From: Phyllobates terribilis
Taxonomy: Eukaryota
NCBI RefSeq assembly: GCF_046119375.1
Contig: NW_027362769.1
Span: 360,592,001 to 360,656,000, forward strand
Length of the DNA: 64,000 bases
Direction: 5' to 3'
In this document: one piece after another, positions 869-60,234 of the stretch
Numbering within the stretch: the first letter of the stretch is position 1
How the letters are laid out: each line of letters opens with the position of its first letter
Translations under genes and position numbers: made by a program
Notes under the pieces: generated by a model
Told to the model about the DNA's origin: nothing
Databases searched by the model: none
Seen by the model: only the letters and a program-made list of their open reading frames with translations

Positions 869-877
869 TTCCCCCCT
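869..877 (-). other. Polypurine tract of element A (AGGGGGGAA)
   Basis: Abuts the TG start of the 3' LTR. Confidence 0.85.
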
Positions 878-2215: not shown

Positions 2216-2220
2216 GAAGT

Positions 2221-4100
<1,880 letters not shown>

Positions 4101-33624: not shown

Positions 33625-34825
33625 TGTAGCACCCTGAGGATTCGGCTGCTACAGGGGTATTGCACCTCAACCCAGAGGTGTGATATCCCACTCCCGGGTA
33701 AGGAAGGAGTGTGGAACTGAGCTCAGATAGACTGCATGCACTACATACATCCCATTCCAGAGGAGCAGGCCGACGGTACTCCCACTTAGAAATGTGCAGG
33801 TACAACCGAGCCTGTTCCTGGCTGGAGTGGGAGGGGGGTGGTACATCCCATGTAGTGTAGGGGCAGATAGGGGGAGCAGTCTGGGTAGTGATAGGAGCTC
33901 ATTGGGTGCTGGTCACCTGAGCTCACACATAGAGGGATATATAAGGAGGGCACCAACTTAGATCAGGGTCAGACGCTGAGAACAAGTCAGTTGGAGAGGA
34001 GAGAGAAGGAAACAGCAGCCCTGGAGAGAGAGAGAGTGGAGCAGAGAAAGACCCAGAGGGGGAAGACTGAAGGGACCCAAGAACCCAAATTAGAGCACCG
34101 GGTGAGGAGTCAGCAAGAGGGTACCGGAACCCAAGCTGGTGGGGGTAAAGACATTCCCCAGCCAGAGACCGGAGACCGTGGGCAGTGTCTGTCACGGTCA
34201 CCCACCACATTCACCCCGAAGGCACACCACATGAAGGGTCAGGGAACCCAGGGCCAAGGGTGTCCCAAAAGAAGGCCCGAGGGAGCTGGACCTAGGTGAA
34301 TCACTGGTGGGGACGGCTGAAGAAAGGACAGAGGGAGAGCTCAGGGCCACGCTCTGGACTTGTTTGGGGGTTGGCCGGATCCAGGACCTGGTGGACGCAG
34401 CACGGCTCGGGTGGTCACTAGCAGCTGGAGTGACCAGTACAACATCAGCAGTAAGTAAACACCCTTAACTGCACAACCCGAGTCTGTCTTCATTGCCGGC
34501 TGCATCGCACCACCACAACCCCCATCCTCTGCGCCTGTCCCCTCTGAGGCTATACCCCTCCCGTTGGGGGTTATCTCACCAAGCTGCGCACCCACCATCA
34601 GCCTCAGCGGACCCTGCTGCAGCGGCGGCCACAGTGACCGCATCCCAACGGGTGGCGTAGTCGACACAAAAGAACTTTAGTAACATCTGTAAAGCTGCCA
34701 CATAACACTTAGCTTGACGCCCTGGGCACGGGACCGGGTCACAGCCGCTCGGAGACTACAACCCCCCATCTGATCCGGTGCCGGGTATTCCCCTCAAAAA
34801 GGAATATGTCCCAGGGGGCGCGTCA
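33625..34825 (+). repeat. 5' LTR of element B
   Basis: TGTAGCACCC...GGCGCGTCA; only one difference from 37391-38591 was noticed. Confidence 0.95.
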
Positions 34826-36914
34826 ACTTTGGCGTAGTCGGCAGGATTACGTGCCCGCAACACCCGGGTACTGCGTGCCTGAAGAAAAGTGCAAGTTTAC
34901 CTCAGAAAGAAGACTCCTGCCGGTTCCGGAGGGTCCACGCCATCGGACTCCATCACCAGTCGTTTCCCGCCGATTGTCCGCCATTTCCAGCTTGTTCCCG
35001 CCATCTGCAGAGTTTCCCGCCACTGGGCGACGCTTCCCGCCAAAACCGCAGATTTCCCGCCTTGGAAGAGCAGCGGACGCCATTATGGGCGTGCCAAAGG
35101 AGGGCAGGAGGCCACCTCCCATCGTGGGCCAGGACAGAAAATGGCGCCAAAAGTGGAAACCGCCCCCACCAACAGAGACTGTGATGCTGGAGGTGTCTGT
35201 CAGCGTGAAAGAACTCCCCCTGGAGCTGACAGTCACCGAGTTGCCCCGGGACCGCCCTCTAAGTGGGAGGAGACGAAAGAGAAGAGAAAAGATGGGTGTC
35301 GCTTGGAGCAGTCTGGAGCGAGCGCACCCGGAGGCAGGAAGCCTGGAAAGGAGCAGCAGAAAAGCTCACCCGGAGATGGAAAGAGAGCAGAACAGCACCG
35401 GCCCGCTGGCCAGGAGTCTGCTAGAGACCGAGGAAGGAGGGCAGAGCAGCACCGGCCCGCTGGCCAGGAGCCTGCCGGAAGCCGAGCAGAGCAGCACCGA
35501 CCCGATGGTCAGGAGCCTGCTAGAGTCCACAACCCCGCTAGGTCTAGCGGAGATCCTAGCGCAGCTCCCCCGAGACCGGGAGTGTGCACAAACTGCCCTG
35601 GAGGGCCTCGCAAGGAGGATGGCCCGGGTACAGCGTGAGATACTGGCGGAGTGGAGCCGGGAGATGGCCCAGCAAGCAGAGACCAGTCAACGGAGCACGC
35701 TACCCTGGAAGAGGAAGCAGACCGCCTCTGAGGATGGCGCAGGAGGACCCAAGGCCGGAGACGGCGCCGAGGAGGGAGCCGAACGCATGGAGGCAGGTAA
35801 AGGGGACGCCTATACCCCAAGCCGTGACACCGCTTACCTGCCCCAGCTCCCCGTCGCAGAGTCCGAAAGTCCCCCTGCTGTGCCCGTAGCCGCCACGTCA
35901 CCGCAATGGACTAGGCCCCGACCGGAAGCCGCCGAAGCGACCCCTGTGACGTCACGCGCCTCGACCCGGAGCGTGACAAAGCAGGAAATACCACCAGCCT
36001 GGTCGCAAGGCCTAGTACCCCCGGGCGCCGCACCACCAACAGCGCCCCCTACCTCCGCGGATCCTCCGGCCTGGCCGCAAGGCCAGGTAGCCCAGGGCAC
36101 CGCCGTCCTAACGGTGCCCTTCACCTTCCAGGTGCCCCAGGCCTGGCCGCAAGGCCTGGGCAACCCGGGCGCCACCACCACCGCGCCCGCGCCTGCAATA
36201 CCTAGGGTGCCACACCTGGGGGAGGACCTCTTCGGCCAGCTCACATGGCCGGACGGGCGGCCCTTCATCTGGCCCGAAGGGTACCCTGAGCTGGAGCGGC
36301 AGCAAAGACTAGGGCCCTTGTGTGAGCCCCTAATCCCGGCTCCGAAGCCCGTGGCTCGGGTCTCGCCTCCTCTAGCAGAAGCCCAATTCGTGTGGGACCC
36401 CACGGGAGAAGATTTGATGGGGTTCACCGGAGAAACTCGGGCAGCCGCAGCTGAACGTACAGAGTGTTGCCGTCAACAGCTGGCAGAGTTTAAGAGAGAA
36501 CGGGAGGAGAGGCGGGTCAGAGAACAACAGGCCCAAATCCAGAGCGCGGAGCAGAAGAGCCGGACTAGGAGGAACCCCCGTGCAGCGCATTGTCCCCGCA
36601 CCATCGGGACAGTGATAAAGTTCAACCCGCAGCATGGGTGGGGCTTTATTCGGGACCGTAACAACCGCGGTGACGTTTTTGTGACTCGCAGAGACGTCGA
36701 GTCCCACCTGCCGGAAGGTCACAAAGGCCGTGACCTCTACGTCGGAGACGAGGTCACTTTCACCCGGCACAAGTGTGCCAAAGGACCTTACGCCCTCCAC
36801 GTACACCGCCTGACGGAGGAGGAGTTGCGGTGCGAGGAGGAGGAGCAAGAGGACCCGGACGGGTCTGAAGTAACAACCAGCTATAAGCAAAGAGCAGGAG
36901 GAAGACGCCGTTGA
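34806..36914 (+). CDS. 702-aa protein: basic/Pro-rich region, coiled coils, C-terminal cold-shock domain (about 36603-36812) and acidic tail; true start codon uncertain
   Basis: IGTVIKFNPQHGWGFIRDRNNRGDVFVT...LYVGDEVTFTRHKCAKGPYALHV follows the CSD pattern (RNP1 GxGFI, RNP2 DVFV). Confidence 0.82.
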   Translation: MSQGARQLWRSRQDYVPATPGYCVPEEKCKFTSERRLLPVPEGPRHRTPSPVVSRRLSAISSLFPPSAEFPATGRRFPPKPQISRLGRAADAIMGVPKEGRRPPPIVGQDRKWRQKWKPPPPTETVMLEVSVSVKELPLELTVTELPRDRPLSGRRRKRREKMGVAWSSLERAHPEAGSLERSSRKAHPEMEREQNSTGPLARSLLETEEGGQSSTGPLARSLPEAEQSSTDPMVRSLLESTTPLGLAEILAQLPRDRECAQTALEGLARRMARVQREILAEWSREMAQQAETSQRSTLPWKRKQTASEDGAGGPKAGDGAEEGAERMEAGKGDAYTPSRDTAYLPQLPVAESESPPAVPVAATSPQWTRPRPEAAEATPVTSRASTRSVTKQEIPPAWSQGLVPPGAAPPTAPPTSADPPAWPQGQVAQGTAVLTVPFTFQVPQAWPQGLGNPGATTTAPAPAIPRVPHLGEDLFGQLTWPDGRPFIWPEGYPELERQQRLGPLCEPLIPAPKPVARVSPPLAEAQFVWDPTGEDLMGFTGETRAAAAERTECCRQQLAEFKREREERRVREQQAQIQSAEQKSRTRRNPRAAHCPRTIGTVIKFNPQHGWGFIRDRNNRGDVFVTRRDVESHLPEGHKGRDLYVGDEVTFTRHKCAKGPYALHVHRLTEEELRCEEEEQEDPDGSEVTTSYKQRAGGRRR
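34830..34847 (+). other. PBS of element B (tRNA-Ser AGA/TGA type)
   Basis: TGGCGTAGTCGGCAGGAT, 4 nt after the LTR. Confidence 0.9.
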
Positions 36915-37381
36915 GTGCGGCAGAGCAGGTGATGTAAATAGTTACCCAATCGGGGTATAAAGGAACTGAAACTGGAACTGTTGTTGCTGCTAAAATAGTC
37001 CCCGTTGGGACCAGTGAACTGTTTTACCCGTTAACCCCTTCATCCTACAGGCTGAGGACTGTGAGCAGCCATTCCCTTTCCTCTACCTGGCCGAGGACTG
37101 AGAGCGGCCAACTTCCAACTTCCCCTGTATATAGTTGCGCGTCCTAAAGCGCCCCCTACCGGTTTTATAGGAAAACCAGTTTTTCTGAGAGACTGTCGTA
37201 CTTTTCCCGGACACACGTTGCACAGTGTCCGGAGGAGGAACCTGAAACCAGAGACGACGAGAATGTTTATATGAAAAAGTTTTATATATATATAATGTTT
37301 TATATGTTTTATATGTTCATATAAAAATTTTGTATGTTTTGGTGTTTTGTCTTACAGCCCGAGGACGTGCTGTGATTTACC

Positions 37382-37390
37382 AGGGGGGAA
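37382..37390 (+). other. PPT of element B
   Basis: AGGGGGGAA immediately before the 3' LTR. Confidence 0.88.
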
Positions 37391-38591
37391 TGTAGCACCC
37401 TGAGGATTCGGCTGCTACAGGGGTATTGCACCTCAACCCAGAGGTGTGATATTCCACTCCCGGGTAAGGAAGGAGTGTGGAACTGAGCTCAGATAGACTG
37501 CATGCACTACATACATCCCATTCCAGAGGAGCAGGCCGACGGTACTCCCACTTAGAAATGTGCAGGTACAACCGAGCCTGTTCCTGGCTGGAGTGGGAGG
37601 GGGGTGGTACATCCCATGTAGTGTAGGGGCAGATAGGGGGAGCAGTCTGGGTAGTGATAGGAGCTCATTGGGTGCTGGTCACCTGAGCTCACACATAGAG
37701 GGATATATAAGGAGGGCACCAACTTAGATCAGGGTCAGACGCTGAGAACAAGTCAGTTGGAGAGGAGAGAGAAGGAAACAGCAGCCCTGGAGAGAGAGAG
37801 AGTGGAGCAGAGAAAGACCCAGAGGGGGAAGACTGAAGGGACCCAAGAACCCAAATTAGAGCACCGGGTGAGGAGTCAGCAAGAGGGTACCGGAACCCAA
37901 GCTGGTGGGGGTAAAGACATTCCCCAGCCAGAGACCGGAGACCGTGGGCAGTGTCTGTCACGGTCACCCACCACATTCACCCCGAAGGCACACCACATGA
38001 AGGGTCAGGGAACCCAGGGCCAAGGGTGTCCCAAAAGAAGGCCCGAGGGAGCTGGACCTAGGTGAATCACTGGTGGGGACGGCTGAAGAAAGGACAGAGG
38101 GAGAGCTCAGGGCCACGCTCTGGACTTGTTTGGGGGTTGGCCGGATCCAGGACCTGGTGGACGCAGCACGGCTCGGGTGGTCACTAGCAGCTGGAGTGAC
38201 CAGTACAACATCAGCAGTAAGTAAACACCCTTAACTGCACAACCCGAGTCTGTCTTCATTGCCGGCTGCATCGCACCACCACAACCCCCATCCTCTGCGC
38301 CTGTCCCCTCTGAGGCTATACCCCTCCCGTTGGGGGTTATCTCACCAAGCTGCGCACCCACCATCAGCCTCAGCGGACCCTGCTGCAGCGGCGGCCACAG
38401 TGACCGCATCCCAACGGGTGGCGTAGTCGACACAAAAGAACTTTAGTAACATCTGTAAAGCTGCCACATAACACTTAGCTTGACGCCCTGGGCACGGGAC
38501 CGGGTCACAGCCGCTCGGAGACTACAACCCCCCATCTGATCCGGTGCCGGGTATTCCCCTCAAAAAGGAATATGTCCCAGGGGGCGCGTCA
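37391..38591 (+). repeat. 3' LTR of element B
   Basis: Near-identical to 33625-34825. Confidence 0.95.
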
Positions 38592-41500: not shown

Positions 41501-43369
41501 TACTGTATATAGAGCAGCCTGTACAGTATATAGATCAGTGTGTACAGTATATAAAGCAGCCTGTACAGTATATAGAGCAGTGTGTATAGTATATAGAGCT
41601 GCCTGTACAATTTATAGAGCAGTGTGTAGAGTATATAGAGAAATGTGTACAGTATATAGACCAGTGTGTACAGTATATAGAGCTGCCTGTACAGTATATA
41701 GAGCGGTGTGTACAGTATATAGAGCAGCGTGTACAGTATATAGAGCCGCGTGTACAGTATATAGAGCTGCCTGTACAGTATATAGAGCAGTGTGTACAGT
41801 ATATAGAGCTGCCTGTACAGTATATAGAGCAGTGTGTACAGTATATAGAGCAGTGTTTACAGTATATAGAACAGTGTGCACAGTATAAAGAGCTGCCTGT
41901 ACAGTATATAGAGTAGTGTGTACAGTATATAGAGCAGCCTGTATAGTATATAGAGCTGCCTGTACAGTATATAGAGCAATGTGTATAGTAAATAGAGCAG
42001 TGTGTACATTATATAGAGCTGCCTGTACAGTATATAGAGCAGTGTGTACAGTAAATAGAGCTGCCTGTACAGTATATAGAGCTGCCTGTACAGTATATAG
42101 AGCAGTGTGTGCAGTATATAGAGCAGCCTGTACAGTATATAGAGCAGTGTGTACAGTATATAGAGCTGCCTGTACAGTATATAGAGCAATGTGTATAGTA
42201 AATAGAGCAGTGTGTACATTATATAGAGCTGCCTGTACAGTATATAGATCAGTGTGTACAGTATATAGATCAGTGTGTACAGTAAATAGAGCAGTGTGTA
42301 CATTATATAGAGCTGCCTGTACAGTATATAGAGCAGTGTGTACAGTATATAGAGCAGTTTACACAGTATATAGAGCTGCCTGTACAGTATATAGAGCAGT
42401 GTGCACAGTATAAAGAGCTGCCTGTACAGTATATAGAGTAGTGTGTACAGTATATAGAGCAGTGTGTACAGTATATAGAGCTGCTTGTACAGTATATAGA
42501 GCAATGTGTACTGTATATAGAGCAGTATATACAGTGTATAGAGCAGTATGTACAGTATATAGAGCAGTGTGTACAGTATATAGAGCAGTGTGTACAGTTT
42601 ATAGAGCAGTTTGCACAGTATATAGAGCTGTCTGTACAGTATATAGAGTAGTGTGTACAGTATATAGAGCAGTGTGTACAGTATATAGAGCTGCCTGTAC
42701 AGTATATAGAGTAGTGTGTGCAGTATATAGAGCTGCCTGTACAGTATATAGAGCAGTGTGTACAGTATATAGAGCTGCCTGTACAGTATATAGAGCAATG
42801 TGCACAGTATAAAGAGCTGCCTGTACAGTATATAGAGTAGTGTGTACAGTATATAGAGCAGTGTGTACAGTATATAGAGCTGCCTGTACAGTATATAGAG
42901 TAGTGTGTGCAGTATATAGAGCTGCCTGTACAGTATATAGAGCAGTGTGTACAGTATATAGAGCTGCCTGTACAGTATATAGAGTAGTGTGTGCAGTATA
43001 TAGAGCAGTGTGTACAGTATATAGAGCTGCCTGTACAGTATATAGGGCAGTGTGTACAGTATATAGAGCAGTTTGCACAGTATATAGAGCAGCCTGTACA
43101 GTATATAGAGCTGCCTGTACAGTATATAGAGTAGTGTGTGCAGTATATAGAGCAGTGTGTACAGTATATAGAGCTGCCTGTACAGTATATAGAGTAGTGT
43201 GTACAGTATATAGAGCAGTGTGTACAGTATATAGAGCTGCCTGTACAGTATATAGGGCAGTGTGTACAGTATATAGAGCAGTTTGCACAGTATATAGAGC
43301 ACCCTGTACAGTATATAGAGCTGCCTGTACAGTATATAGAGCAGTTTGCACAGTATATAGAGCTGCCTG
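38592..43369 (+). repeat. 21-bp satellite array (4.8 kb)
   Basis: Variants of TGTACAGTATATAGAGC(A/T)G(TG/CC). Confidence 0.98.
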
Positions 43370-44615
43370 TGACTCGCCTCGCCCTCCCTGGCGGTGGGGT
43401 TACTCGGAGCCGGGTCAGTGTACATGTTGCGGTGATGCAGTCGTGGCCTGGACCCGTTCCGTGCCCAGGGCTGTCACATTAAAATAATGTGCTTTGGGAT
43501 GAGTGGTTGTTCGGCTATGCCACCTGTGGTTTCTGGTGAAGGCCACCAGCGCTGCAACATTCCACTGAGGCTGGTGTTAGGGGCAGCTAGGATGGGACGG
43601 CTCCCCACAGGCGGAGCAGGCCTCAGGGCAGTGTGCGAAGGAATGGTGGGTGCAATGCTGCGCAGGAATAAACAAGCGGAGGCGGTGAATGAAGTCATCC
43701 GGGTCTTTACTCACTTTAGATGAACTTTCAGCCGCAATGCTTCTCTCTGCTACTCACGGCGTACTGCGGCCACCGGGAAGGGGATCCAGCACTTCCCAGG
43801 TAGATCAGTAGCACCTGTACAGACCCCGCTGGTGTGTGTTCCTCTCCTTGGTAAGCTCTCCTACTGAAACTTCTCCTGACTGTGCGTGGAATGAACGTGG
43901 TGTAAGGCCGGGTCCCACTGGGTAAACGCAGTTTAAGAGATACAGGTGGCGACTCCGCTCCGTCCGTATCACCCTGGGATCCACTAAGCCTCCAGGCTTC
44001 TCTGACTGAGACGTGAAGTGACAAAGTCAGATATCGGGGGCAGGTTACCCCTTTTGCAGCAGGAATCCCTCTGACTAGGCCAGAGTAAAGAATACAGGTG
44101 GCGACTCCGCTCCGTCTGTATCCCCCTGGGATCCTTTTGCCTGTGGAGCCTATCTCCTCTGCTCCCCTCCTAGGCCTTCTTAGGACAGGACCCTGACCGG
44201 TTAGAGACAGTGGTTAACTCTGACTCGCTCCTCGTCTCAAGGCCAGAGTACGAGGACCGCGAATCTTCAGCCAGCTACAGACTCTTGCTGTACCCTGACA
44301 GAAGACCCTCAATCAAAGACCTCGAACTTAAGATGGCCGTGGATTATATATCAATCAATAAGTTCTTCCTTAAAGTGTGTCCTCCACCCTCACCCATTAC
44401 TAGGTTCCCCCTATCTTTAGTTCCCCCCTATCTCCTCTATCATGTGCCGGGGCAGCACCCTGGTGCATTTAGGCCCCCTACAGGACAGAAGTGATGTAGT
44501 GTTGAGTGTGAAGTGGGGTCTCGTGTGATGCTCCATCCTTACCTAGAGGAGGAGATACCACACCTCATCTGAGGTGCAGTACCCCTGTGGCGATTGAACC
44601 CTCAGGGGCGCCACA
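43370..44615 (-). repeat. 3' LTR of element C
   Basis: TGTGGCGCC...GGCGAGTCA on the minus strand, preceded by GGGGGGGAA. Confidence 0.9.
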
Positions 44616-45148
44616 TTCCCCCCCGGTGAAACTCAGCACGTCCGCGGGCTGCAATAGAGTAAAGAATTGGTACATACATTCAAAATTTTAAAAGTTTTTG
44701 TAAACATGAAACAATCTTCCCTTTATGGGAGGCTCAGTTACTTTAACGTTGCATGATATATATAGTATAAATATAGAAAACATCAAAGAGACATTATGCA
44801 TGTAGACAGTACTGTAGAAAATACGGTAGAAAAAGTCAGTTCAGCAGCATGAGGGACCTGCCCCAAACCATCAGCGTAGGCCCTGGGGTGGCTGCAGGGT
44901 ATGGAAATCCCAAGTTGGAACTTCAGTAGAGCCACACCAGACAGGTTTTGCTTCTGAGGTCTGAGGTAGAAGTGGTTTTACATAAAACCAATAGGGAGCA
45001 CCTAAATAGGTGCAAACTATTTACAAAGTTAGTCTTTCACATGCGGAGCGTCCGCAGGGACAAATGTCTCTTTCAACTAAATCCGGGTGAAAAACTTGAA
45101 AAACAAATAACAGTTCACACAATAGGGAGATCCATCTCCCGGGGCTGC

Positions 45149-45458
45149 TTAAAAGTGGGATCCCCTCCGGGGGAATGGCTCTTTCTTACCAACGGAGCCT
45201 GACCGGTCCTCTACAGCTAGGTGCGTGGGGGCGTCCTCCCTGATTACCTTGTGGACGTCCAGGGCATACCACCCACGCTCCCCGTGGTGGCGGGAGTAGT
45301 ATATCAAATTGCCCGGGTAGAGGTTCCGGCCAGGGTGGCCCTGCTCCAGCCGCGGCTCGACGTCCCGCCGGTTGACGAACACGTCCCGATTGAACTGTGA
45401 GCTGCGGATGAAGCCCCATCCTGCTACCTGGTGGAAGCACATATTAACGCCTTCCCGG
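45149..45458 (-). pseudogene. Cold-shock-domain half of the element C ORF
   Basis: EGVNMCFHQVAGWGFIRSSQFNRDVFVNRRDVEPRLEQGHPGRNLYPGNLIYYSRHHGERGWYALDVHKV aligns with the CSD of element B. Confidence 0.8.
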
Positions 45459-46591
45459 TGTGACGCCCAGCTGTGCTTGGTATCACAGATCCTAGAAGGG
45501 TGTATTGAAGGATTCCTCCACAAGAGGCCCCCATAACAATTCACACATCTCCACCTTCCACCTCAAACCACCAGAGGGAGCCCGTTAGGGATAGATAAAT
45601 AGGGAATGTGGAGCCAGGCAGCAGTTAGTCTAGACTGGACACGACAGAGAGCAAACCTGTTGAGAGAGTTCCTGCAGTATAGAAGCCTGAAAGAGGTCAG
45701 TCTGCAGTGGAGCGCAGTCCAGACTTGGTTGAAGCTCAGAGAGGTGAGCTTAGCTTAGGTGTGCCGGCGCCATAAGATCGGTGAAGCACGTCAAGCTGCC
45801 GTTAGTGTGATTAGCCTAGTGAGGGCCCGAGTAGGCCGAAGGCAAAAAGAAGAGTTAGTGCATAGGGGGCAGAGGAGCTTAACTGGCTCACCCCGAAGCA
45901 GTTACCGGACACCGGATCCGAAGCTTACCGGGATCGCCACGACCCAGTAAGATAAACCGGAATCCCTGGAGAGCTACAAGTCCCAGGATCGCTACAGTGC
46001 TGATACGTAACAATGCCAGGAGACACATAGGCCCCGTAAGTCTGGAGCGTGCACTCCAAGAGAAGGCCCTACCACAAAGTCAGTCAGCGCAGGACAGAGA
46101 CAAAGTTAGGCCTAGCTCCAGGCAGGTCAGAAACTTACTACGCAGAAGCAAGAAACAGGAGGCCCAAAACCCACTCATTGGGGAGGATTCTGACATGCAC
46201 CCTTCACCCTACAGTGCTCCGGGACGTGCCTGAATTGCCATCAGTAAAAGGTACTGAAGTGACTATCGTGTCTGTCCCCATTCTTGCTCTGACCCGGCTC
46301 GGTCTCACCTGTTCTTCATCCCCCGTCATACACTGCCCTAAGGCCTAGCTCCACCTGTGGGGAGCTATACCACCCAGCTGCCTTATCATCGGCTTCAGTG
46401 GACTGCGCAGCACTGGTGATCCTCACCAGAAGCCACAGGTGGCGTCACAAACTCTTTAATAAAACTTAACATCTATCAACGCCTTCTTTAAAGGAGAGAC
46501 CCCAGGGTACGGGCCCGGGTGCCGACCGCCGCGACATCCCCAAGGCTAAAGGCCCGGGTATCCAAGTTATCCCCATCCCCTGGGCTAGTCA
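45459..46591 (+). repeat. 5' LTR of Gypsy D
   Basis: TGTGACGCCC...GGCTAGTCA. Confidence 0.95.
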
Positions 46592-46599
46592 TCTCCTTC

Positions 46600-46618
46600 T
46601 GGCGTCACTAACAGGATT
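46600..46618 (+). other. PBS of Gypsy D (tRNA-Ser CGA-like)
   Basis: TGGCGTCACTAACAGGATT, one mismatch to my recollection of the complement of a vertebrate tRNA-Ser(CGA) 3' end (TGGCGTCACGAACAGGATT). Confidence 0.7.
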
Positions 46619-46983
46619 GCCCGTGCCCGCTGCAACGACGCCGTGTTATGCCCGTTGCCACCGGGCACTGTGCGCCTTTATTCTGAACTGTGTACGTAAA
46701 GTTGTGGTGAAGGTTGCCGCCATTGTTGGGCCACCGAGCGAGAAGAAGGGCGTAACCGCGGGAAAATTAGGGGCGTACCTGCAAAAGAGCGCGAAGCCTC
46801 GGACACGCCCCACGCTTCAACGTCAGACCAAGAGGCGCCAGGTCCTGTGAGGAACGTCGCTGAACTCTCTGACGTAGGACGCAAGCGACGCAAGGTCCTG
46901 AAGATGCCCATCACCTGCGGAGCTGCGGCCTACCGGAAGAAAGAACTAGAAGGTAGGCCAAGGTTAACTAGGGGGGCGCTAAG

Positions 46984-48038
46984 ATGTCTGACGAGCAACA
47001 GAACGCCGACATGCCGGTCAACGTCCCTGAGGTTCAACCCGCGCCCGATGATGAGCAGGCCGAAGCCGCCGCTTCACCAGCAGCGCCTGTAACACTCATT
47101 ATCCCTATGAATTTACCGTACATTCCTGGAGCAAAGTGGCTCCCCCAGTACAATGGCAAACCAGATACCCTGTCTGGATTCAAACGGAAGATATGTGGTA
47201 TCTTAGACATGTACTCTATGACCGGCAAACAAATAGCGCCGTTGTATTGGGACAACTGACCGGTGCTGCGGAACGGGAAGTGGATACGTGGTCGGCCGCA
47301 GACCAGGAGTCAGTGTCCGCAATATTCCAAAAACTACAGACTGTCTTTGAGGACCTTACTGAGGCGGACCTCCGGATGAGGTTCTACAGCTGTTCCCAAC
47401 AACCAGAGGACAATGTCCGGGACTATGCCTGGCGTCTTCAAGGGGCCCTGCGAGCTCTAAACCAGGTTAGTCCAACCAGCGTTGAGAATGAGAATAAAAT
47501 GCTGAAGGAACAGTTTGTCCGGGGACTTAGGTCTCCGGAGGAGAGCAGGACTGTGGGTTGGTGGTCCCTGGATCATCCAGATATCACCTTTGACAATCTT
47601 AAGGACATGGCTATAAAAGGACTGCAGCCCCTGGAAACAAATGCCATCCAATGTTGCCAGGGTGGGGCAACCCCAGAGCCTGTAACACCCACCTTTTCCC
47701 CAGTGGCTGCTGAAGCTAAGGTTCCAGCAACGTCCCCTAAAGAACTGGACAGTCTGCGCTCTGAGGTGTGTCAGTTGAGCAAAACCCTGACCACCGTGCT
47801 GAGTGCTCTGCAACTGTGGACGGAGCCCGAGGAAGGAGGGAAAATCCTGCTAGCCGATAGCCTTGAGGATGTCCCCTGGATGCGGAGGAGGCCAACACCG
47901 CCCTCGCCGAGGACCAGTGACCAGCGCCGTCCACCGAGGGACCCTGCCTGCTACCGCTGCCGCAAGACCGGACACATCGCCCAGAATTGTCCTTTAAACG
48001 AGAAAACCCTGGGTCCGAGGGCCGACACCCAGGAGTAA
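46984..48038 (+). pseudogene. gag: Gag with one frameshift near 47240
   Basis: PYIPGAKWLPQY..., LKEQFVRGL, and a CCHC knuckle CYRCRKTGHIAQNC. Confidence 0.9.
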
Positions 48039-51000
48039 ACTCACCAGGCCCCTCAGACTGGTACAACAGGTTCGTCGGAGGAAGACCTTTCCTGTCCATT
48101 TTGCTGGACGGGATCCCGACGAACGCCCTGCTGGACACAGGATCTCAGGTAACCATCATGCCTGACGTCCTCTACAAGAGGTTCTGGTCCATGGACGAAC
48201 TACGTCTGCCAGCTCTAAATCTTTCAGTATATGCTTCAAATGGACTCCCCCTTAACCTACTCGGGGTTAAGAATGTGACTGTGAAGGTGGGGAGAGTGGA
48301 GCTGAAGGACCAGGGACTAATTGTAGTAGAGACTAATCCTGATGACACTAATCCGTATATGGTACTTGGCACTAACATTGTTGGTAACTGTTTGGGAGAT
48401 GTTGAGTTCTTGCTCCAACAGATCGCCGACACTGCCAGGCCGAGACAGAGGCGGGCACTGCAAAGGGAGATCCGAGTCCTGATGTATCAACAGCAAGTAA
48501 GGTTAACAGACGGTGAAATCGGTGATGTGCGGGTAACAGACCCCATACCCATTGTTATCCCTCCAATGAGTGAAATGCTCATCTGGTGTAGAGCTGCCAT
48601 AGGTCTAAGAGGACAGAGCTACCAGGCGGTAATAGAACCCCTTTGCTCTGAGCATAGACCCACGCTCTTAACCGCCAGGGGAGTGGTAGATGAACGTAAT
48701 GGGAGGGTGCCCGTCCGTCTTCTCAACTTAGGGGAAGATGAGGTCAAACTGCCACGTTATGCCACTGTTGCCAAATTACATGCTGTCAATAACAACTGCA
48801 TCCATGAGGAGGAGTCCTTAACTTCACCAGACGAAGTGGAGGATAATGACCCTGCAACCCAGGTGGAGGATTGGTGTCAACAGCTCCATGTTGGGACAGA
48901 CACTACTCCTGCCCATCAAAAACAGGGTGTACACCGGGTGGTTCAAGAATACTCGCAGGTGTTCAGTAAACATCCACTAGACTTCGGGAGGGTTAAGGGG
49001 GTTCATCATCATATCCCCACAGGCAACCATTCCCCAATCAAAGAACGTTATAGGCCTATACCCCCAGCTCACTACCAGAAGGCAAAAGAAATGCTGCATG
49101 ACATAAGGAAGGCGGGAGTAATAAGGGATAGTTGTAGTCCCTGGGCAACTCCCCTAGTATTAGTGAGGAAAAAGGACGGGAGCATGAGAATGTGTGTAGA
49201 TTACCGTCAAGTAAATCGCATTACACATAAAGATGCATACCCTTTACCACGCGTAGAGGAGTCCCTAGCTGCCTTAAAGTCTGCAAATTACTTTTCCACC
49301 TTTGACCTCACTAGTGGGTACTGGCAAGTAGCTGTGGCTGAGGAGGATAGGGAAAAGACGGTCTTCACCACTCCGATGGGACTCTGCGAGTTCAACAGTA
49401 TGCCGTTCGGACTCTGCAATGCCCCCGGAAAGTTCCAGAGATTAATGGAGTGCTGCCTGGGACACCGCAACTTCGAAACTGTGTTACTTTACCTGGACGA
49501 TGTAATTGTGTACTCCAGAACATACAAGGACCACTTGAAACACCAGGCAGAGGTATTTGAGTCACTGTCCCGGTACAGGATGAAGTTGAAGCCCTCAAAG
49601 TGCCACCTGCTCAAGAGGAAGGTACAGTACCTGGGGCACATTGTCAGTCCGGAAGGGGTAGCACCAGACCCGGAGAAAGTCACAGCCATCCAGAAGTGGC
49701 CAGAGCCGAAAAACCTCAAGGAGGTGCGTCAGTTCTTGGGACTAGTATGATACTACCGGAGGTTCGTAAAGGACTACACTAAGAAGGCAGCTCCTCTGCA
49801 AGACCTCCTGGTAGGGCAGTACCCCAAAGGCAGAAATCCCCCATTCCACTGGGGTAAGGAGCAAGCCGAGTCGTTTCAGGAGATGAAGGAGATCCTGACA
49901 GGTGATGAGATCCTAGCGTACCCTGACTACAGCCAACCGTTCCTGTTGTATACAGATGCCAGCAACGAAGGGCTGGGTGCTTTATTAAGTCAGAAGCAGA
50001 ATGGCCAAGAGAAGGTGATCGCATACGCGAGCAGGAAGCTCCGCCCGACTGAAAGAAATCAAGAGAACTATAGCAGCTTCAAGTTGGAGTTCCTGGCCTT
50101 GGTCTGGGCCATCACTGAAAGGTTCAAGCACTACCTGGCCTCCAGCAAGTTCACTACCTTTACTGAAAACAACCCCTTGACCCATCTTGAAACAGCGAAG
50201 TTGGGGGCACTGGAACAACGATGGATGGCTCGGCTGTCAAACTACCAATTTACAATTAAATACCGGGTGGGCCGCAAGAACGCCAACGCCGATGCCCTGT
50301 CTAGGATGCCTCACCAGTCAGACACAGAGGAAGAAGTGGATGACCTGGAAGAGGTAGAGCTACCTGCCTTTCATCGGAGTGGGATGATCCACGAGCAATG
50401 ACCTTCCAGGAAACAGCGTGGAAAGACGTTAAACCCCCTGCCTCACCACAGCTGGAAAGAGACCCAGGACAGCGACCCGGTTGTCAGCCGCATCAAGGAG
50501 CTGATAACCCAAGAAGGTGCCTCCCTGGAGAAGGATGCGGCTCTCCAAGCAAATCAGCTGTGGAACGAGAGAAGCCGGCTGTTTATCTACCGTGAGAAGC
50601 TGTGCCGGAGGTACGTTAATCCAAAAACCCACGAGATGGTATGGCAGATAGTGGTCCCGAAGACAGACATCCAGATGGTATTAGAAGCTTACCACGATCA
50701 GGCGGGGCACTTTGACTGGAAAAAGCTAGAGACCCTGCTGAAATGTCGATTCTACTGGGTAGGAATGCGCAGCTCCATTGAGAGGTGGTGCCGGGACTGT
50801 GGACCCTGTGGCCTAAGAAGAAAAGACTTCAGCAGCCAGAAGGCACCCCTGCAACCTATCAAGACGACTCGGCCCCTGGAGATCGTGGCCCTGGACCATG
50901 TCAAGCTCTCCTCCAGCAGGTCAGGGTACTCCTATGCTCTGACCATGGTGGATCACTACTCATGTTTCCTGGTGGTCACCCCCGTCAAAGACCTGATGGC

Positions 51001-52132
51001 AGAGACAGCAGCAAAGACGTTCCAAGCGTACTTCTGCAGACCCCACAGATATCCTGAGCAGGTGCTGACGGACCAAGGCCCGGCCTTTGAGGCTGAATTG
51101 TTCAAGGAGTTCTGCCATTTGTACTGGTGTAAAAAAATCAGAACTACACCGTACCATCCACAAACTAACGGTCTCAGCGAAAAGATGAACATCATCATCG
51201 ACCTGCTAAAGACCATACCACTTGAGGAGAGAAATCAGTGGCCAGACCTACTACCTGACTTAGTGGATCAGTATAATCATATAGCAGTCAGTTCCACCAA
51301 TTGCACTCCGGCATATCTCATGCGGGCAAGGCCAGGAAAGCTGCCGATGGATCTGGAGCTTGGTGTTGATGAGCCTGAAGCTGATATGACCACTGAAAAC
51401 TGGGACAAGACCAGACAAGAGCAGTATAGAAGGGTACAAGCTTGTGTCAAGGACAGTCTTACTCGGGTGAGAGAAAAGCAGGAAAGTCAATACAACAAGA
51501 ACGCACCCGCAGAACCTTTCATACCAGGTGAAACAGTACTAAAAAGAAAAAGACGCAACCACAAACTTGATGACCAGTGGGAAAAAGACACCTACACTGT
51601 GTTACCGTCAAGGTTTGACAATAAGAAGACATGCATAATCAGTCGAGATGGAGGAAAAAGGTCCACAGCAGTGTCCAGGGACCATCTAAAGTTGTGTCCA
51701 GAATTACTGAAACCCCAAGAAAAAGTGCCTTTCACAATTCTGGAAGAACCTGAAGAAACAGTGATCCACACTGACCTAGGAGACTTCCCAGCAGATTGGC
51801 CTCAAATAGGAAGAGCAGTAATTATTCCAGTACTCCAATTCTATGAATAGCCAGAAAACCCTCCACCGCAAGTTGAACCTGTAAGCGCTGAAGAAGAGCC
51901 AGCTCAAGAAGTATCCCCGGATGAAGGATCCCCGGAAGGAGCAGAGCAAGAGGGCCCAGCCAATGGTAGACTTGCTAGTCCAAGAGAGAGGTTAAGGCAG
52001 TTTTACAACATGGTTACACGTAGAACTGGTAGAGTAACTGAGAATACAGACACTGATATCCCACCAACCACCGCACTACGCAGATCAGCACGTAGCACGC
52101 GAGGTAAACCCCCTGCTAGGTACATTGAATAA
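47987..52132 (+). pseudogene. pol: Pol in the -1 frame; a single frame with three in-frame stops (49748, 50399, 51848)
   Basis: Protease LLDTGS, reverse transcriptase YLDD, RNase H YTDAS, integrase H-H-C-C and D-D-E, C-terminal RRSARSTRGKPPARY. Confidence 0.95.
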
Positions 52133-55100: not shown

Positions 55101-55214
55101 ATAAAAACCCCATATGATTCTGGCATTGCTGTAATCACACCGACCCGAAGAATAAAGTCGTCTAATCACTTATACCGCACAAGGAACGGCGTCAAAAATA
55201 AACTCTTGAGTTAG

Positions 55215-55345
55215 GATTGGGCTAGGGTTAGGGCTGGGTTTGGGGCTAGGGTTGTGCTGGGGCTAGGGTTGTGCTGGGGCTAGGGTTGTGCTGGGGCTAG
55301 GGTTGTGCTGGGGCTAGGGTTGTGCTAGGGTTAGGGCTGGGGTTG
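55215..55345 (+). repeat. Telomere-like G-rich tandem repeat (17-bp unit GGGGCTAGGGTTGTGCT)
   Basis: About 5 copies flanked by GGGTTAGGG and GGGCTAGGG motifs. Confidence 0.85.
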
Positions 55346-55389
55346 GGATTTTTTTCAAAAGTAAGAAAAAAAGATGACGATATGGCGAC

Positions 55390-55689
55390 TAGTGTTGAGA
55401 GCAAGTGCTCGCTACTTGAGTTTGCATCGGGTGCTCTGGTATGCATTTAGTATCGTGGGTATTTGAGTGACATGCTCGAGTCTCTGCCCCATATGCTTCG
55501 CGGCCAAAAAACTTTACGGGGATTGCCTGCCATGCACGAGCGATCCCCGCATGTTTTTTTTTGGGTGTCTAATAACCGTGAAACATGCGGAGCAGGGACT
55601 CGAGCATGTCACTCGAGCACACGCTGTACATGGTGCATACCTGAGTACCCGATGCAAACTCAAGTAGCGAGCACTTGCGCTCAAGAATA
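55390..55689. mobile_element. hAT-type MITE, about 300 bp, nested in the piggyBac-like element
   Basis: About 50-bp inverted arms TTGAG(A/C)GCAAGTGCTCGCTACTTGAGTTTGCATCGGGT...; 8-bp flanks match only 5 of 8. Confidence 0.75.
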
Positions 55690-55769
55690 ATGAAAACTTA
55701 TTCAATATGATGACCTAATGTAAACAAATAATGTGCCGTACCTCTGGGTTCAAAATGTTCACTATACAC

Positions 55770-58130: not shown

Positions 58131-59099
58131 ACATGGGCTCTCCAAACACAACATGGCGTCCGCTAATTATTCAAGCAAATTTTACAATCAAAAAGTCAAA
58201 TAGCGCTCCTTCCCTTCCGAGCCCTGCCGTGCGCCCAAACAGTATTTTTTCCCCAAATATTGGGTATCTGCGTGCCCAGGGGAAATTGCACAACAAATTT
58301 TGGGGTCCATTTTTTCTTGTTACCCCTGTGAAAATAAAAAAAATTGGGTCTAAATTAACATTTTTGTGAAAAAAGTTAAATGTTCATTTTTTTCTTCCAC
58401 ATTCAAAAAATTCCTGTGAAGCACCTGAAGGGTTAATAAAGTTCTTGAATGTGGTTTTGAGCACCTTGAGGGGTGCAGTTTTTAGAATGGTGTCACTTTT
58501 GGGTATTTTCTGTCATAAAGACCTCTCAAAGTGACTTCAAATGTGATGTGGTCCCTAAAAAAATGGTTTTGTAAATTTTGTTGGAAAAATGAGAAATCGC
58601 TGGTCAACTTTTAACCCTTATAGCTCCCTAACAAAAAAAAATTTTGGTTCCAAAATTGTGCTGATGTAAAGTAGACATGTGGGAAATGTTATTTATTAAC
58701 TCTTTTGTGTGACATATCGCTCTGATTTCAGGGCTTAAAAATTCAAATTTTGAAAATTGCAAAATTTTCAAAATTTTCGCCAAATTTCCGTTTTTTTCAC
58801 AAATAAACGCAAGTGATATCGAAGAAATTTTTCCACAATCATGAAGTACAATATGTCACGAAAAAACAATCTCAGAATCAGGGGGATCCGTTGAAGCGTT
58901 CGAGAGTAATTACCTCATAAAGTGACAGTGGTCAGAATTGTAAAAATTGGCCCGGTCATTAACGTGCAAACCACCCGCGGGGCTTAAGGGGTTAAAGGAG
59001 AGACCCCAGGGTACGGGCCCGGGAGAAGACCGCCGCGACATCCCCAAGGCTAAAGACCCGGGTATCCAAGTCATCCCCATCCCCTGGGCTAGTCACCGG

Positions 59100-59968: not shown

Positions 59969-60210
59969 CCGTCTTGACGGACACTACTATGCGGACTGTC
60001 TCTGCTGCAGGGGGCGGTCTGCACTTTTGGCGCCACTGGGGAGCCAGGCCCACGATGGCAGGACTTTGGTTGCTGTTGTTTTTGCACATAATCGCGTCCG
60101 TTCTTCTTGGGCGGTGCCACGTTAAGTGTGTAACAACAGTTTTTTGTGAAAAAGGCGCACAGTACCCGACGGCAATGAGGGTTTTCCTATTCCATTGCTG
60201 CGGGCTCGCA

Positions 60211-60228
60211 ATCCTGCCGACTACGCCA
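60211..60228 (-). other. PBS of element C (tRNA-Ser AGA/TGA type)
   Basis: TGGCGTAGTCGGCAGGAT, identical to elements A and B. Confidence 0.9.
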
Positions 60229-60234
60229 AGTTGG

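What the first reader, a model, noticed from the sequence alone, without database searches (positions are those of the whole stretch)
37050..37177. Conserved 3' hairpin cassette shared by the three satellite elements and the Gypsy element
Seen: hairpin GGCTG-AGGACTGTGAG-CAGCC and its twin TGGCCG-AGGACTGAGAG-CGGCCA occur in B (37050-37070, 37088-37110) and A (1232-1252, 1194-1216, minus strand). Gypsy D has GGCTG-AGGACTATGTG-CAGCC at 52282-52302. After a TGTA(A/T)ATA(G/A)TT motif, D has GCACTC-CCTG-GAGTGC (52327-52342) and C has GCACCT-ATTT-AGGTGC (44998-45013), i.e. compensatory stem changes. B and C share a GGTTTT..AAAACC hairpin. C and D share about 100 bp, including an exact 23-mer (44875-44897 minus = 52418-52440). 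Inference: a cis-acting packaging or replication signal enabling trans-mobilisation. The GGAC loop might be the CSD ligand, which is speculative.
Basis: partly seen in the sequence, partly recalled or inferred. Interest (0 to 1): 0.72.

Follow-up and report, generated by a model that had tools for sequence, protein, structure and literature searches.

The report
Conserved 3' RNA hairpins in frog retrotransposons
Four nested frog LTR retrotransposons share a set of small RNA hairpins and Pumilio-type UGUANAUA boxes between their last gene and the 3' LTR; selection has kept these for a long time, so they probably control what happens to the element's RNA, but a role in packaging is not shown.

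Summary
They lie between the stop codon and the polypurine tract of four nested LTR retrotransposons in a dendrobatid-like frog genome.

- **The elements:** B and C are non-autonomous, with one ORF ending in a cold-shock domain (CSD). A is a deleted Gypsy/B chimera. D is a Gypsy element.
- **Relatives:** copies from Phyllobates and Ranitomeya share the plan. More distant Gypsy copies (a Logan run of unknown species, Pseudophryne) keep a GGAC-loop hairpin by the polypurine tract.
- **GGAC hairpin:** the loop displays RGGACH. The stems differ completely between lineages yet still pair (5-8 bp).
- **UGUANAUA boxes:** 16 on the sense strand against 1 antisense, and only N varies. In the closer lineages a hairpin with compensatory changes follows the box.
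- **Covariation:** across C, D and L002, 45 predicted pairs are 92% kept, against 27-47% in slid controls.
- **Weak points:** folding energy of single sequences is not significant, and no Rfam family matches.

This is a real, selected, sense-strand cis-acting RNA region. It occurs in Gypsy lineages that have no CSD. Packaging or trans-mobilisation is plausible but unproven. I prefer control of RNA fate by host proteins (a Pumilio-type protein plus a GGAC reader). The CSD-ligand idea gains no support.

The parts
33625..38591 (+). Element B: complete non-autonomous LTR retrotransposon. LTRs are 33625-34825 and 37391-38591, the primer-binding site is 34830-34847, and the single ORF 34806-36914 ends in a cold-shock domain.
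   Evidence: The LTR pair is 99.9% identical. LTR ends and primer-binding site were read. Pfam CSD matches residues 601-667. No Gag similarity was found.
36933..36957 (+). B: first UGUANAUA box (36933-36940), followed by hairpin UACCC-AAUCG-GGGUA (36943-36957), about 20 nt after the stop codon.
   Evidence: The same box and hairpin occur in A, D, L001 and L002, with different loops and an A-U to G-C change in L001.
36998..37011 (+). B: hairpin GUCCC-CGUU-GGGAC.
   Evidence: It is identical in L001. A has a G.U variant at the matching spot.
37050..37070 (+). B: GGAC-loop hairpin 1, GGCUG / AGGACUGUGAG / CAGCC.
   Evidence: It is the minimum-energy fold of the local 41-nt stretch.
37088..37110 (+). 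B: GGAC-loop hairpin 2, UGGCCG / AGGACUGAGAG / CGGCCA. It is a tandem duplicate of hairpin 1 with a U-A to C-G compensatory change.
37126..37152 (+). B: second UGUANAUA box (37126-37133), followed by hairpin GCGC-GUCCUAAA-GCGC (37137-37152).
   Evidence: In one search, 94% of cells pair and 3 of 6 pairs show compensatory change across six elements.
37161..37177 (+). B: hairpin GGUUUU-AUAGG-AAAACC.
   Evidence: It is shared with C, L001 and L002. The stem does not vary, so there is no covariation evidence for it.
37207..37232 (+). B: 8-bp hairpin CCGGACAC / GUGUCCGG.
   Evidence: L001 has CUGGUCAC / GUGACCAG, which is two compensatory pairs.
37352..37390 (+). B: hairpin just before the polypurine tract (37352-37375, loop CCGAGGACGU), then the tract itself (37380-37390).
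   Evidence: A conserved box sits directly 5' of the polypurine tract in all lineages.
1..3290 (-). Element A: recently moved chimeric non-autonomous element. The 5' LTR runs 3290->about 2223, the primer-binding site 2215->2198, and the 3' LTR 869->1, cut by the window edge.
   Evidence: The LTR pair is 99.8% identical. The LTR, the first 739 bp and the last 313 bp of the internal part are 90-92% identical to the L004 Gypsy. The middle (1483->1183) is B-like.
1181..1353 (-). A: the B-like cassette. It holds a UGUANAUA box (1353->1346), a hairpin (1343->1330), the twin GGAC-loop hairpins (1252->1232 and 1216->1194), and a second box (1188->1181) at the recombination junction.
1057..1073 (-). 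A: a third GGAC-loop hairpin of the L004 Gypsy type, GGGG / CAGGACAGA / CCCC.
   Evidence: An alternative register was found for the L004 copy.
43369..61385 (-). Element C: non-autonomous cold-shock-domain element interrupted by D. The 5' LTR runs 61385->60234, the primer-binding site 60229->60212, the cold-shock-domain piece 45457->45164, and the 3' LTR 44617->43369.
   Evidence: CSD E-value 8e-5. D is flanked by the target-site duplication CCGG.
44845..45056 (-). C: 3' region. It holds an altered hairpin UGCGGA-CGC-UCCGCA (45056->45042) where the GGAC-loop hairpin would be, a UGUANAUA box (45025->45018), hairpins at 45013->44998 and 44990->44973, and a long stem domain (44961->44845) containing the 23-mer.
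45459..59095 (+). Element D: Gypsy (Ty3/mdg4-type) element. The 5' LTR is 45459-46591 and gag, protease, reverse transcriptase, RNase H and integrase lie in 47136-51850. The integrase frame is broken after 51850. The 3' LTR is 52693-53724 plus 58992-59095, split by a 5.27-kb insertion.
52155..52470 (+). D: 3' region. It holds a UGUANAUA box (52155-52162) with hairpin (52165-52177), an AAAGGAC motif (52270-52276), the GGAC-loop hairpin (52282-52302), a second box (52316-52323) with hairpin (52327-52342), and a structured domain (52354-52470).

Best explanation
The cassette is part of a modular, structured, cis-acting region of the full-length (genomic) RNA of a frog Ty3/Gypsy lineage. It lies between the last stop codon and the polypurine tract.

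The region is a string of short hairpins that hold short single-stranded motifs in fixed places.

- One or two UGUANAUA boxes, the first 15-25 nt after the stop codon where the stop could be placed. In the closer lineages a GC-rich hairpin follows the box.
- One to three hairpins whose 7-11-nt loops display RGGACH.
- Further covarying stems.
- A conserved box directly 5' of the polypurine tract.

Non-autonomous derivatives inherited these modules and exchanged them by recombination: the cold-shock-domain elements B and C, and the chimera A.

Most likely mechanism (inferred): the motifs are landing sites for RNA-binding proteins that set the fate of the unspliced RNA. A host Pumilio-family protein would bind UGUANAUA. 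A reader of GGAC in a loop would bind the hairpins; this could be the host m6A writer and readers or IGF2BP-type proteins, or the element's own zinc-knuckle nucleocapsid. Together they would take the RNA out of translation and into a stored or granule state, from which Gag supplied in cis or in trans can package it. A non-autonomous element must keep such a region to stay a usable template.

**Shown:** the anatomy, conservation across lineages, strand specificity and compensatory changes.

**Inferred:** the binding proteins and the effect on RNA fate.

**How sure:** about 0.85 that this is a selected sense-strand RNA element, and about 0.45-0.5 that it works through host RNA-binding proteins as described.
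For: **Position.** In A, B, C, D and L001-L005, L243, L244 and L248 the modules lie between the stop codon and the polypurine tract, on the coding strand.

**GGAC-loop hairpin.**
- At the spot marked by the same flanks (AAAGGAC upstream, AAAAC downstream) the stems are GGCUG/CAGCC in D, GGUUG/CAGCC with a G.U pair in L002, GGUCAC/GUGACC in L003, and GGAGUAA/UUGCUCC in L243a.
- Only 19%, 7%, 2.5% and 1.1% of 1811 background GGAC sites have stems of at least 5, 6, 7 and 8 bp. The joint chance is therefore about 4e-6.
- The hairpin is the local minimum-energy fold, or nested inside it, in 10 of 12 cases. L004's minimum uses another register.
- More distant Gypsy elements also carry a GGAC-loop hairpin, about 10 nt 5' of the polypurine tract (L244 and L248, whose integrases are 49% and 42% identical to D's).
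- G.U pairs occur in these stems. They would be A-C mismatches on the other strand.

**UGUANAUA boxes.**
- There are 16 sense against 1 antisense in 6.4 kb of untranslated regions. N is A 6 times, U 6, C 3 and G 1; upstream positions are unconstrained.
- Between B and L001, both boxes differ only at N. The two elements are 89% identical overall.
- The consensus and its free fifth position are the known Pumilio specificity (PMC3192847).

**Covariation.**
- Hairpin after the second box: 94% of cells pair and 3 of 6 pairs are compensatory.
- C/D/L002: 45 pairs are 91.9% paired against 27-47% when slid. Ten pairs change on both sides against 0-3 when slid, and 0 of 500 shuffles reach this.
- B against L001: by direct reading, stem changes are confined to two helices, against 17.5% in non-stem positions.

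**Retention in derivatives.** The modules persist in elements that have lost all of pol: B, C, L001, L002, L243b and A.

**Precedent.** In Ty3, localisation and packaging of the RNA depended on the presence of the untranslated regions or POL sequences. P-body factors are thought to separate translation from assembly (PMC4974528).
Against: - No binding, methylation or expression data exist here. The proteins are named from motif identity only.
- Thermodynamics is weak. Local hairpins score z from +0.6 to -2.4. The cassette as a whole scores z -0.61, with a competing fold in which the loops pair with pyrimidine-rich spacers.
- The sample is small: 13 untranslated regions, several of them closely related, so counts are not independent.
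- The structure for C/D/L002 was predicted from the same alignment on which it was scored.
- Pumilio usually represses and destabilises mRNAs, so a benefit to the element has to be argued.
- The conserved motif extends past the 8-mer (GUU follows in most copies), so another reader is possible.
- C has lost the canonical GGAC-loop hairpin, L243b's version is not stable, and L248 has no exact UGUANAUA box.
Confidence: 0.5

Rival explanations
1. Packaging or dimerisation signal. The GGAC-loop hairpins are bound by the zinc-knuckle nucleocapsid of Gypsy Gag, so that elements without Gag (B, C, A) are packaged and copied in trans.
For: - The hairpins are shared by the autonomous D and the non-autonomous A, B and L001, and are kept in elements lacking gag and pol.
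- The loops expose conserved G residues (positions GG..UG.G). Zinc knuckles prefer exposed G residues (from memory).
- D's Gag has a CCHC zinc knuckle.
- The chimera A is best explained by template switching between co-packaged B-type and L004-type RNAs (inference).
- In Ty3, packaging depended on the presence of the untranslated regions or POL sequences (PMC4974528).
Against: - The hairpins do not track helper relationships. C shares its LTR end and distal region with D but lacks the hairpin.
- A shares its LTR, leader and distal region with the L004-type Gypsy, yet its twin hairpins come from a different lineage.
- B's primer-binding site differs from D's at 6 of 18 positions.
- This view does not explain the UGUANAUA signature.
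- No loop-complementary partner for kissing or cyclisation was found: 20 matches against 18.4 expected.
Confidence: 0.22
2. Nuclear export or stability element for an intron-less, unspliced RNA. It would work like the CTE, RTE or MTE elements of retroviruses and mouse retroelements. The GGAC sites could be m6A sites whose readers promote export or protect a transcript with a long 3' untranslated region from decay.
For: - It sits in the same place as those elements, between the last ORF and the 3' LTR.
- It is multi-hairpin and partly duplicated.
- GGAC is enriched 2.3-fold on the sense strand, and 38 of 42 sites fit GGAC followed by A, C or U. This is the DRACH core, recalled from memory.
- The first motifs lie just after the stop codon. 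That is where m6A and retroviral stability elements are known to act (from memory).
Against: - The defining CTE shape, one long stem with two identical internal loops in mirror symmetry, is absent. Here there are terminal loops in direct repeat, and D-type elements have only one.
- No Rfam match was found, even at E-value up to 10.
- Methylation and export cannot be tested here.
Confidence: 0.15
3. Reverse-transcription accessory. The 3' hairpins would pair with the primer tRNA or with the 5' end, like the bipartite primer-binding site of Ty3 or the CYC5/CYC3 pairing of Ty1. Alternatively they help select the polypurine tract for plus-strand priming.
For: - Both Ty3 and Ty1 use 5'-3' contacts (PMC4974528).
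- In the shortest untranslated regions (L244, L248) the GGAC hairpin lies about 10 nt from the polypurine tract.
- A conserved box abuts the tract in all lineages.
Against: - No enriched complement to the loop was found anywhere in the elements.
- In D, B and A the hairpins lie 280-390 nt from the tract.
- No frog tRNA-Ser sequence was available from the tools, so the tRNA-bridge idea was not tested.
Confidence: 0.08
4. Shared ancestry only. The similarity is what remains of a common 3' sequence and has no function. A weaker variant is that the loop exists mainly as the ligand of the elements' own cold-shock-domain protein.
For: - A, B and L001 are close relatives (80-89% identity), so their identical hairpins say little on their own.
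- Single-sequence energies are not significant.
Against: - Stems differ completely between lineages yet still pair.
- Compensatory changes occur in several helices.
- Stems change far less than spacers.
- The motifs are strand-specific.
- The hairpin occurs in Gypsy elements that have no cold-shock domain.
Confidence: 0.05

Closest known systems
Cis-acting transport elements between the last ORF and the 3' LTR (MPMV CTE, IAP RTE, MusD/ETn MTE)
   Same: Same position in the element. Structured, multi-hairpin and partly repeated. Kept in non-autonomous partners, as ETn keeps sequences of MusD (from memory; the ETn/MusD context appears in PMC2674570, listed).
   Different: The shape differs: short terminal-loop hairpins, not a long stem with two mirrored internal loops. 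There is no sequence or Rfam similarity. The host is a frog and the element is a Ty3/Gypsy type, not a retrovirus. Export was not tested.
Pumilio response element (UGUANAUA) of cellular 3' untranslated regions
   Same: An exact 8-mer with a free fifth base, on the sense strand, in a 3' untranslated region, in one or two copies (consensus cited from PMC3192847).
   Different: It sits in a retrotransposon RNA, is mostly followed by GUU, and in the closer lineages is followed by a covarying hairpin. Binding is untested. I found no report of Pumilio boxes conserved in an LTR retrotransposon.
Ty3 and Ty1 cis-acting RNA signals (bipartite primer-binding site, CYC5/CYC3, dependence of localisation and packaging on the untranslated regions)
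   Same: Ty3 belongs to the same superfamily, and its 3' untranslated region takes part in priming and in RNA localisation and packaging (PMC4974528).
   Different: In yeast the 3' signals are short single-stranded segments that pair with the tRNA or the 5' end. Here they are hairpins with protein-type loop motifs, and no complementary partner was found.
Non-autonomous LTR retrotransposons that depend on an autonomous partner (ETn/MusD, Dasheng/RIRE2, BARE2/BARE1)
   Same: A, B and C have LTRs, a primer-binding site and a polypurine tract but no pol. A shares 90-92% identity with a Gypsy element in its LTR, leader and distal region.
   Different: B and C carry a foreign ORF with a cold-shock domain and no Gag. 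No partner for B was found among the loci fetched.

Membership tests
Pumilio response element | 8-nt core UGUANAUA with the fifth base free | tested here: met
   There are 16 exact sense-strand matches in 13 untranslated regions. N takes all four bases. B and L001 differ only at N in both boxes.
Pumilio response element | Located in the 3' untranslated part of an mRNA, sense strand only | tested here: met
   16 sense matches against 1 antisense. Where the stop could be placed (A, B, D, L001, L002), the first box lies 15-25 nt after the stop codon.
Pumilio response element | Bound by a PUF-domain protein, with an effect on translation or decay | not testable with these tools
   This needs binding and reporter assays.
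Constitutive transport element (MPMV type) | Lies between the last ORF and the 3' LTR | tested here: met
Constitutive transport element (MPMV type) | One extended stem with two identical internal loops in mirror symmetry | tested here: not met
   The elements have terminal loops on short stems in direct repeat. D, L002, L003 and L243a have a single hairpin.
Constitutive transport element (MPMV type) | Binds NXF1 and drives export of unspliced RNA | not testable with these tools
Any curated RNA family (Rfam 15) | Match to a covariance model | tested here: not met
   The only hits above gathering score are histone stem-loops elsewhere in the window. Nothing credible appears at E-value up to 10 in the two untranslated regions.
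m6A (DRACH) site cluster | Sequence context D-R-A-C-H, enriched in the 3' untranslated region | tested here: met
   GGAC followed by A, C or U occurs 38 times against 16.4 +/- 3.8 expected. The canonical loop motifs in A, B, D, L001-L004, L243a, L244 and L248 fit.
m6A (DRACH) site cluster | The adenosine is actually methylated | not testable with these tools
   This needs m6A mapping.
Retroviral-type packaging signal | Bound specifically by Gag nucleocapsid and required in cis for packaging | not testable with these tools
   Only indirect evidence exists: retention in elements without Gag, and the chimera A.
Retroviral-type packaging signal | Shared between a non-autonomous element and its helper | tested here: inconclusive
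   A, B and D share hairpin 1. C resembles D elsewhere but lacks it. A's helper-like parts come from L004, whose GGAC hairpin has a different form.
Ty3-type bipartite primer-binding site (3' segment) | 3' segment complementary to arms of the primer tRNA | not tested
   No tRNA gene was found in the window or the loci. A tRNA sequence from memory was not used.
Non-autonomous LTR retrotransposon | LTR pair, primer-binding site and polypurine tract present; reverse transcriptase and integrase absent | tested here: met
   A, B and C.

The most novel reading that the evidence does not exclude
A whole lineage of frog Ty3/Gypsy elements, together with the cold-shock-domain parasites derived from it, has for a long time kept binding sites for host germline translational regulators in the 3' end of its RNA. 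These are Pumilio at UGUANAUA, possibly Musashi at the overlapping AUAGU, and an m6A or IGF2BP-type reader at GGAC loops. The sites would time the switch from translation to packaging. The GGAC-loop hairpin would be the handle by which elements without Gag enter Gypsy particles.
Probability: 0.15. Interest if true: 0.75.

Novelty: new variant of a known kind. Interest (0 to 1): 0.5.

Why it matters
Dendrobatid frog genomes are very large and about 1 Gb of one of them is Gypsy elements (PMC6278860, abstract). What lets these elements and their non-autonomous riders multiply is not known.

A conserved, structured 3' RNA region with recognisable protein-binding motifs gives a concrete, mutable target. 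It can be used to test how the RNA of a vertebrate Ty3/Gypsy element is exported, silenced, translated or packaged. It can also be used to test how elements without gag or pol take advantage of that machinery.

If the Pumilio signature holds, I know of no earlier report of a retrotransposon lineage preserving a host translational-repressor site over long evolutionary time (one search found none).

Tried and rejected
1. **Public scans for more copies.** I searched metagenome and viral contigs with TGTANATAGTTACCC. The scans returned 119 and 118 stretches, but none of the loci held from them had any BLAST similarity to the untranslated regions, so they are chance matches. These collections hold no frog DNA.

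2. **Covariance model.** A model of the 31-nt hairpin (R1) recovered only its eight seed sequences (E-values 4e-8 to 3.5e-5). The next hit had E 0.76, and the model missed L003 and L243a, whose stems differ. The seed is too uniform for the model to generalise.

3. **Single-sequence thermodynamics.** It is not significant for the cassette (z -0.61) or for most local hairpins. The whole untranslated region of B scores z -2.5.

4. **Two-sequence consensus folding.** Folding B with L001 gave a different long-range fold and did not recover the twin hairpins. Two sequences are too few.

5. **Rfam.** Nothing matched.

6. **Word searches for relatives of the cold-shock-domain ORF.** Two hits came with the C-terminal region scored within the full-length protein. 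None came when the C-terminal piece was searched on its own. That limited the number of copies.

7. **Long-range pairing.** A search for a loop-complementary partner found 20 matches against 18.4 expected. I rejected loop-mediated cyclisation or kissing.

8. **Primer tRNA.** No tRNA gene was found, so the tRNA-bridge idea stays untested.

9. **Gag origin of B's ORF.** No similarity to D's Gag.

10. **MAFFT alignment of hairpins with different loop lengths.** It shifts the register by one column. For L003 and L243a I therefore read the stems directly instead of using the pair-count tool.

No contig looked human. The N runs at 3820-3956 and 31614-31898 were left alone. 
Full report
**1. Observation**

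- The loop pattern AGGACTNNGNG occurs 8 times in the window against 2.55 expected, and none of 100 shuffles reached 8.
- The C-D similarity is 111 bp at 82% identity and contains the exact 23-mer.

**2. What the elements are**

The window is animal DNA. It contains histone 3' stem-loops. The closest public matches to its repeats are in the poison frog Phyllobates terribilis and other dendrobatoid frogs. It is not human. The two N runs were left untouched.

Self-comparison and reading of the LTR ends show four nested LTR retrotransposons.

- **B (33625-38591, plus strand).** Its 1.2-kb LTRs are 99.9% identical. An 18-nt primer-binding site follows the LTR; from memory it is complementary to the 3' end of a tRNA-Ser. 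There is one ORF, whose only Pfam domain is a C-terminal cold-shock domain, and it has no similarity to Gag. A 476-nt untranslated stretch and a polypurine tract follow. B lies inside a 21-bp satellite array.
- **C (minus strand).** It is of the same kind, with a cold-shock-domain match at E 8e-5. D interrupts it, flanked by the target-site duplication CCGG.
- **D.** This is a Gypsy element with gag, protease, reverse transcriptase, RNase H and integrase. Its integrase frame is broken after 51850, and a 5.27-kb insertion splits its 3' LTR.
- **A (minus strand, LTRs 99.8% identical).** It is a chimera. Its LTR, the first 739 bp and the last 313 bp of its internal part are 90-92% identical to a Gypsy element of P. 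terribilis (L004). The roughly 300 bp in between (1483->1183) are B-like. That fragment carries the tail of the cold-shock-domain ORF, the first UGUANAUA box and the twin hairpins. A has no cold-shock domain itself.

**3. Relatives**

The tools hold no frog genome for DNA search. I reached other copies through proteins instead and fetched the DNA around them.

| Locus | Source | What it holds |
|---|---|---|
| L001 | P. terribilis | B-like element, 89% identical to B |
| L002 | P. terribilis | C/D-like element with a cold-shock domain |
| L003 | Ranitomeya | Gypsy element |
| L243a | Ranitomeya | Gypsy element |
| L243b | Ranitomeya | element with a cold-shock-domain-like ORF |
| L004 | P. terribilis | Gypsy element |
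| L005 | Anomaloglossus | Gypsy element |
| L244-247 | a Logan run | Gypsy element |
| L248 | Pseudophryne | Gypsy element |

The integrases of these elements are 42-65% identical to D's.

**4. The GGAC-loop hairpin**

Four lineages share the same flanks (AAAGGAC upstream, AAAAC downstream). Their loops keep nGGACnnUGnn while the stems differ.

| Element | 5' arm / 3' arm |
|---|---|
| D | GGCUG / CAGCC |
| L002 | GGUUG / CAGCC (one G.U pair) |
| L003 | GGUCAC / GUGACC |
| L243a | GGAGUAA / UUGCUCC |

- A, B and L001 carry a tandem duplicate. Its second copy has a U-A to C-G compensatory change.
- L004 and A carry a form with a shorter loop.
- L244 and L248 have a GGAC-loop hairpin about 10 nt 5' of the polypurine tract.

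With the same liberal scan, 19%, 7%, 2.5% and 1.1% of 1811 background GGAC sites have stems of at least 5, 6, 7 and 8 bp. The four homologous sites together therefore have a chance probability of about 4e-6.

G.U pairs occur in these stems, and they would be A-C mismatches on the antisense strand. This points to a structure of the sense RNA.

In local context the hairpin is the minimum-energy fold, or nested inside it, in 10 of 12 cases. L004's minimum uses another register. The energies are not unusual. C has a different small hairpin at this spot, and L243b's version is unstable.

**5. The UGUANAUA boxes**

- In 13 untranslated regions there are 16 sense matches and 1 antisense match.
- The fifth base is A, U, C or G; upstream bases are unconstrained.
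- B and L001 differ in both boxes only at the fifth base.

This is the known specificity of Pumilio-family proteins (PMC3192847). Where the stop could be placed, the first box lies 15-25 nt after the stop codon.

In the closer lineages a hairpin follows the box. For the hairpin after the second box, 94% of cells pair and 3 of 6 pairs show compensatory change across six elements.

**6. The rest of the region**

- For C, D and L002, RNAalifold predicts 45 pairs, and 91.9% of cells are paired against 27-47% when the partners are slid. Ten pairs change on both sides against 0-3 when slid, and none of 500 shuffles reached this. The structure was predicted on the same alignment, which favours it.
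- Between B and L001, an 8-bp hairpin (37207-37232) carries two compensatory pairs.
- Read directly from the sequences, the stem changes between B and L001 are confined to two helices, with three pair-preserving double changes. Non-stem positions differ at 17.5% plus 13 gap columns. Some 'broken' pairs are alignment artefacts, as the sequences show.
- GGAC is enriched on the sense strand: 42 against 18.4 +/- 3.8.

**7. What argues against over-reading**

- The folding energy of the cassette is ordinary (z -0.61). Its minimum-energy fold pairs the purine-rich loops with the pyrimidine-rich spacers.
- The covariance model found only its own seeds.
- The sample is small and partly redundant.

**8. 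Function**

Elements that have lost every enzyme keep these modules, so the modules act in cis on the RNA. Which step they serve cannot be decided here.

I favour protein-binding sites that set RNA fate. The two recurring single-stranded motifs are exact matches to well-known host-protein motifs, they are strand-specific, and they sit where such sites act. In Ty3, the untranslated regions contribute to localisation and packaging, and P-body factors are thought to separate translation from assembly (PMC4974528).

The packaging reading remains possible. The chimera A is indirect evidence for co-packaging of B-type and Gypsy RNAs. However, the hairpins do not follow helper relationships:
- C resembles D in its LTR end and distal region but lacks the hairpin.
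- A's helper-like parts come from L004, while its twin hairpins come from a B-like source.

No complementary partner for the loop exists in the elements. The tRNA-bridge idea could not be tested.

The cold-shock domain is distant from YB-1 and bacterial Csp domains. The hairpin also occurs in Gypsy elements that lack such a domain, so the ligand idea is not needed to explain conservation.

**9. Comparison and novelty**

- The position matches retroviral and retroelement transport elements (CTE, RTE, MTE), but the defining CTE shape is absent.
- No Rfam family matches.
- Searches of the held literature found no report of Pumilio boxes conserved in an LTR retrotransposon, nor of LTR elements carrying a cold-shock domain.

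I file it as a new variant of a known kind: a cis-acting 3' RNA region of a retroelement.

**10. Limits kept**

Where D is broken is stated, without any way to mend it. One bench step was referred.

Noticed in passing
window 38599-43363; also 33430-33619 and 19269-19616: A 21-bp satellite (about 227 copies in the main array). B is inserted in it and C's 3' LTR abuts its right end. A shorter array in the opposite orientation lies at 19269-19616.
   Followed up: partly
window 26516-26561 and 62699-62744: Two histone 3' stem-loops (Rfam RF00032, above gathering score). The nest of transposons therefore sits in or beside a histone gene cluster.
   Followed up: no
window 8657-11377 (minus), inverted repeats 7660-8463 / 13599-14402: A LINE-like ORF with endonuclease and reverse-transcriptase domains, lying between long inverted repeats that are 90% complementary.
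   Followed up: no
window 53725-58991: A 5.27-kb insertion splits D's 3' LTR. It contains 383-bp units in tandem and inverted arrangement (55732-58166).
   Followed up: partly
window 46600-46617 against 34830-34847, 2215->2198 and 60229->60212: A, B and C share an identical 18-nt primer-binding site. D's differs at 6 positions and lies 8 nt after its LTR, so D may use another tRNA variant and may not be the helper of B and C.
   Followed up: partly
window 34806-36914; 45164-45457 (minus); L002 5941-6453; L243 18142-19182: The non-autonomous elements carry a proline-, alanine- and glutamate-rich ORF that ends in a cold-shock domain and has no Gag similarity. A diverged version (40% identity over 60 residues) exists in Ranitomeya, so the family is not recent.
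   Followed up: partly
L002 6001-40383 (P. terribilis gene model P0002): The annotated 'R3H and coiled-coil domain-containing protein 1' matched B's cold-shock-domain region (50% identity), and a C-like element with that domain lies at the start of its gene range. The model may take an exon from the element, which would make it a chimeric annotation.
   Followed up: partly
all 3' untranslated regions (for example window 36933-36943 and 37126-37136): UGUANAUA is mostly followed by GUU, so AUAGU overlaps the box in 11 of 16 cases. From memory, AUAGU fits the Musashi-binding element of Xenopus oocyte mRNAs.
   Followed up: no
window 37071-37087 and 37111-37125; 1231->1217: Pyrimidine-rich spacers before and after each twin hairpin can pair with the GAGGA of the loops. 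This gives the competing fold seen, and in L001 a loop change and a spacer change go together. A pseudoknot or a structural switch is possible.
   Followed up: no
window 37352-37390, 52660-52692, 44618-44660 (minus), 870-905 (minus): A conserved box directly 5' of the polypurine tract (GGAGUACUG or GAGGACGUGCUG, then UUUMAC) forms a 4-7 bp hairpin in nearly every lineage. It is preceded by a U-rich stretch, much like the U-box of retroviruses.
   Followed up: partly
window 1181-1188 (minus) and about 1484: The two junctions of chimera A. The 3' one lies in the second UGUANAUA box at a short TGTAA microhomology, as expected for template switching by reverse transcriptase.
   Followed up: partly
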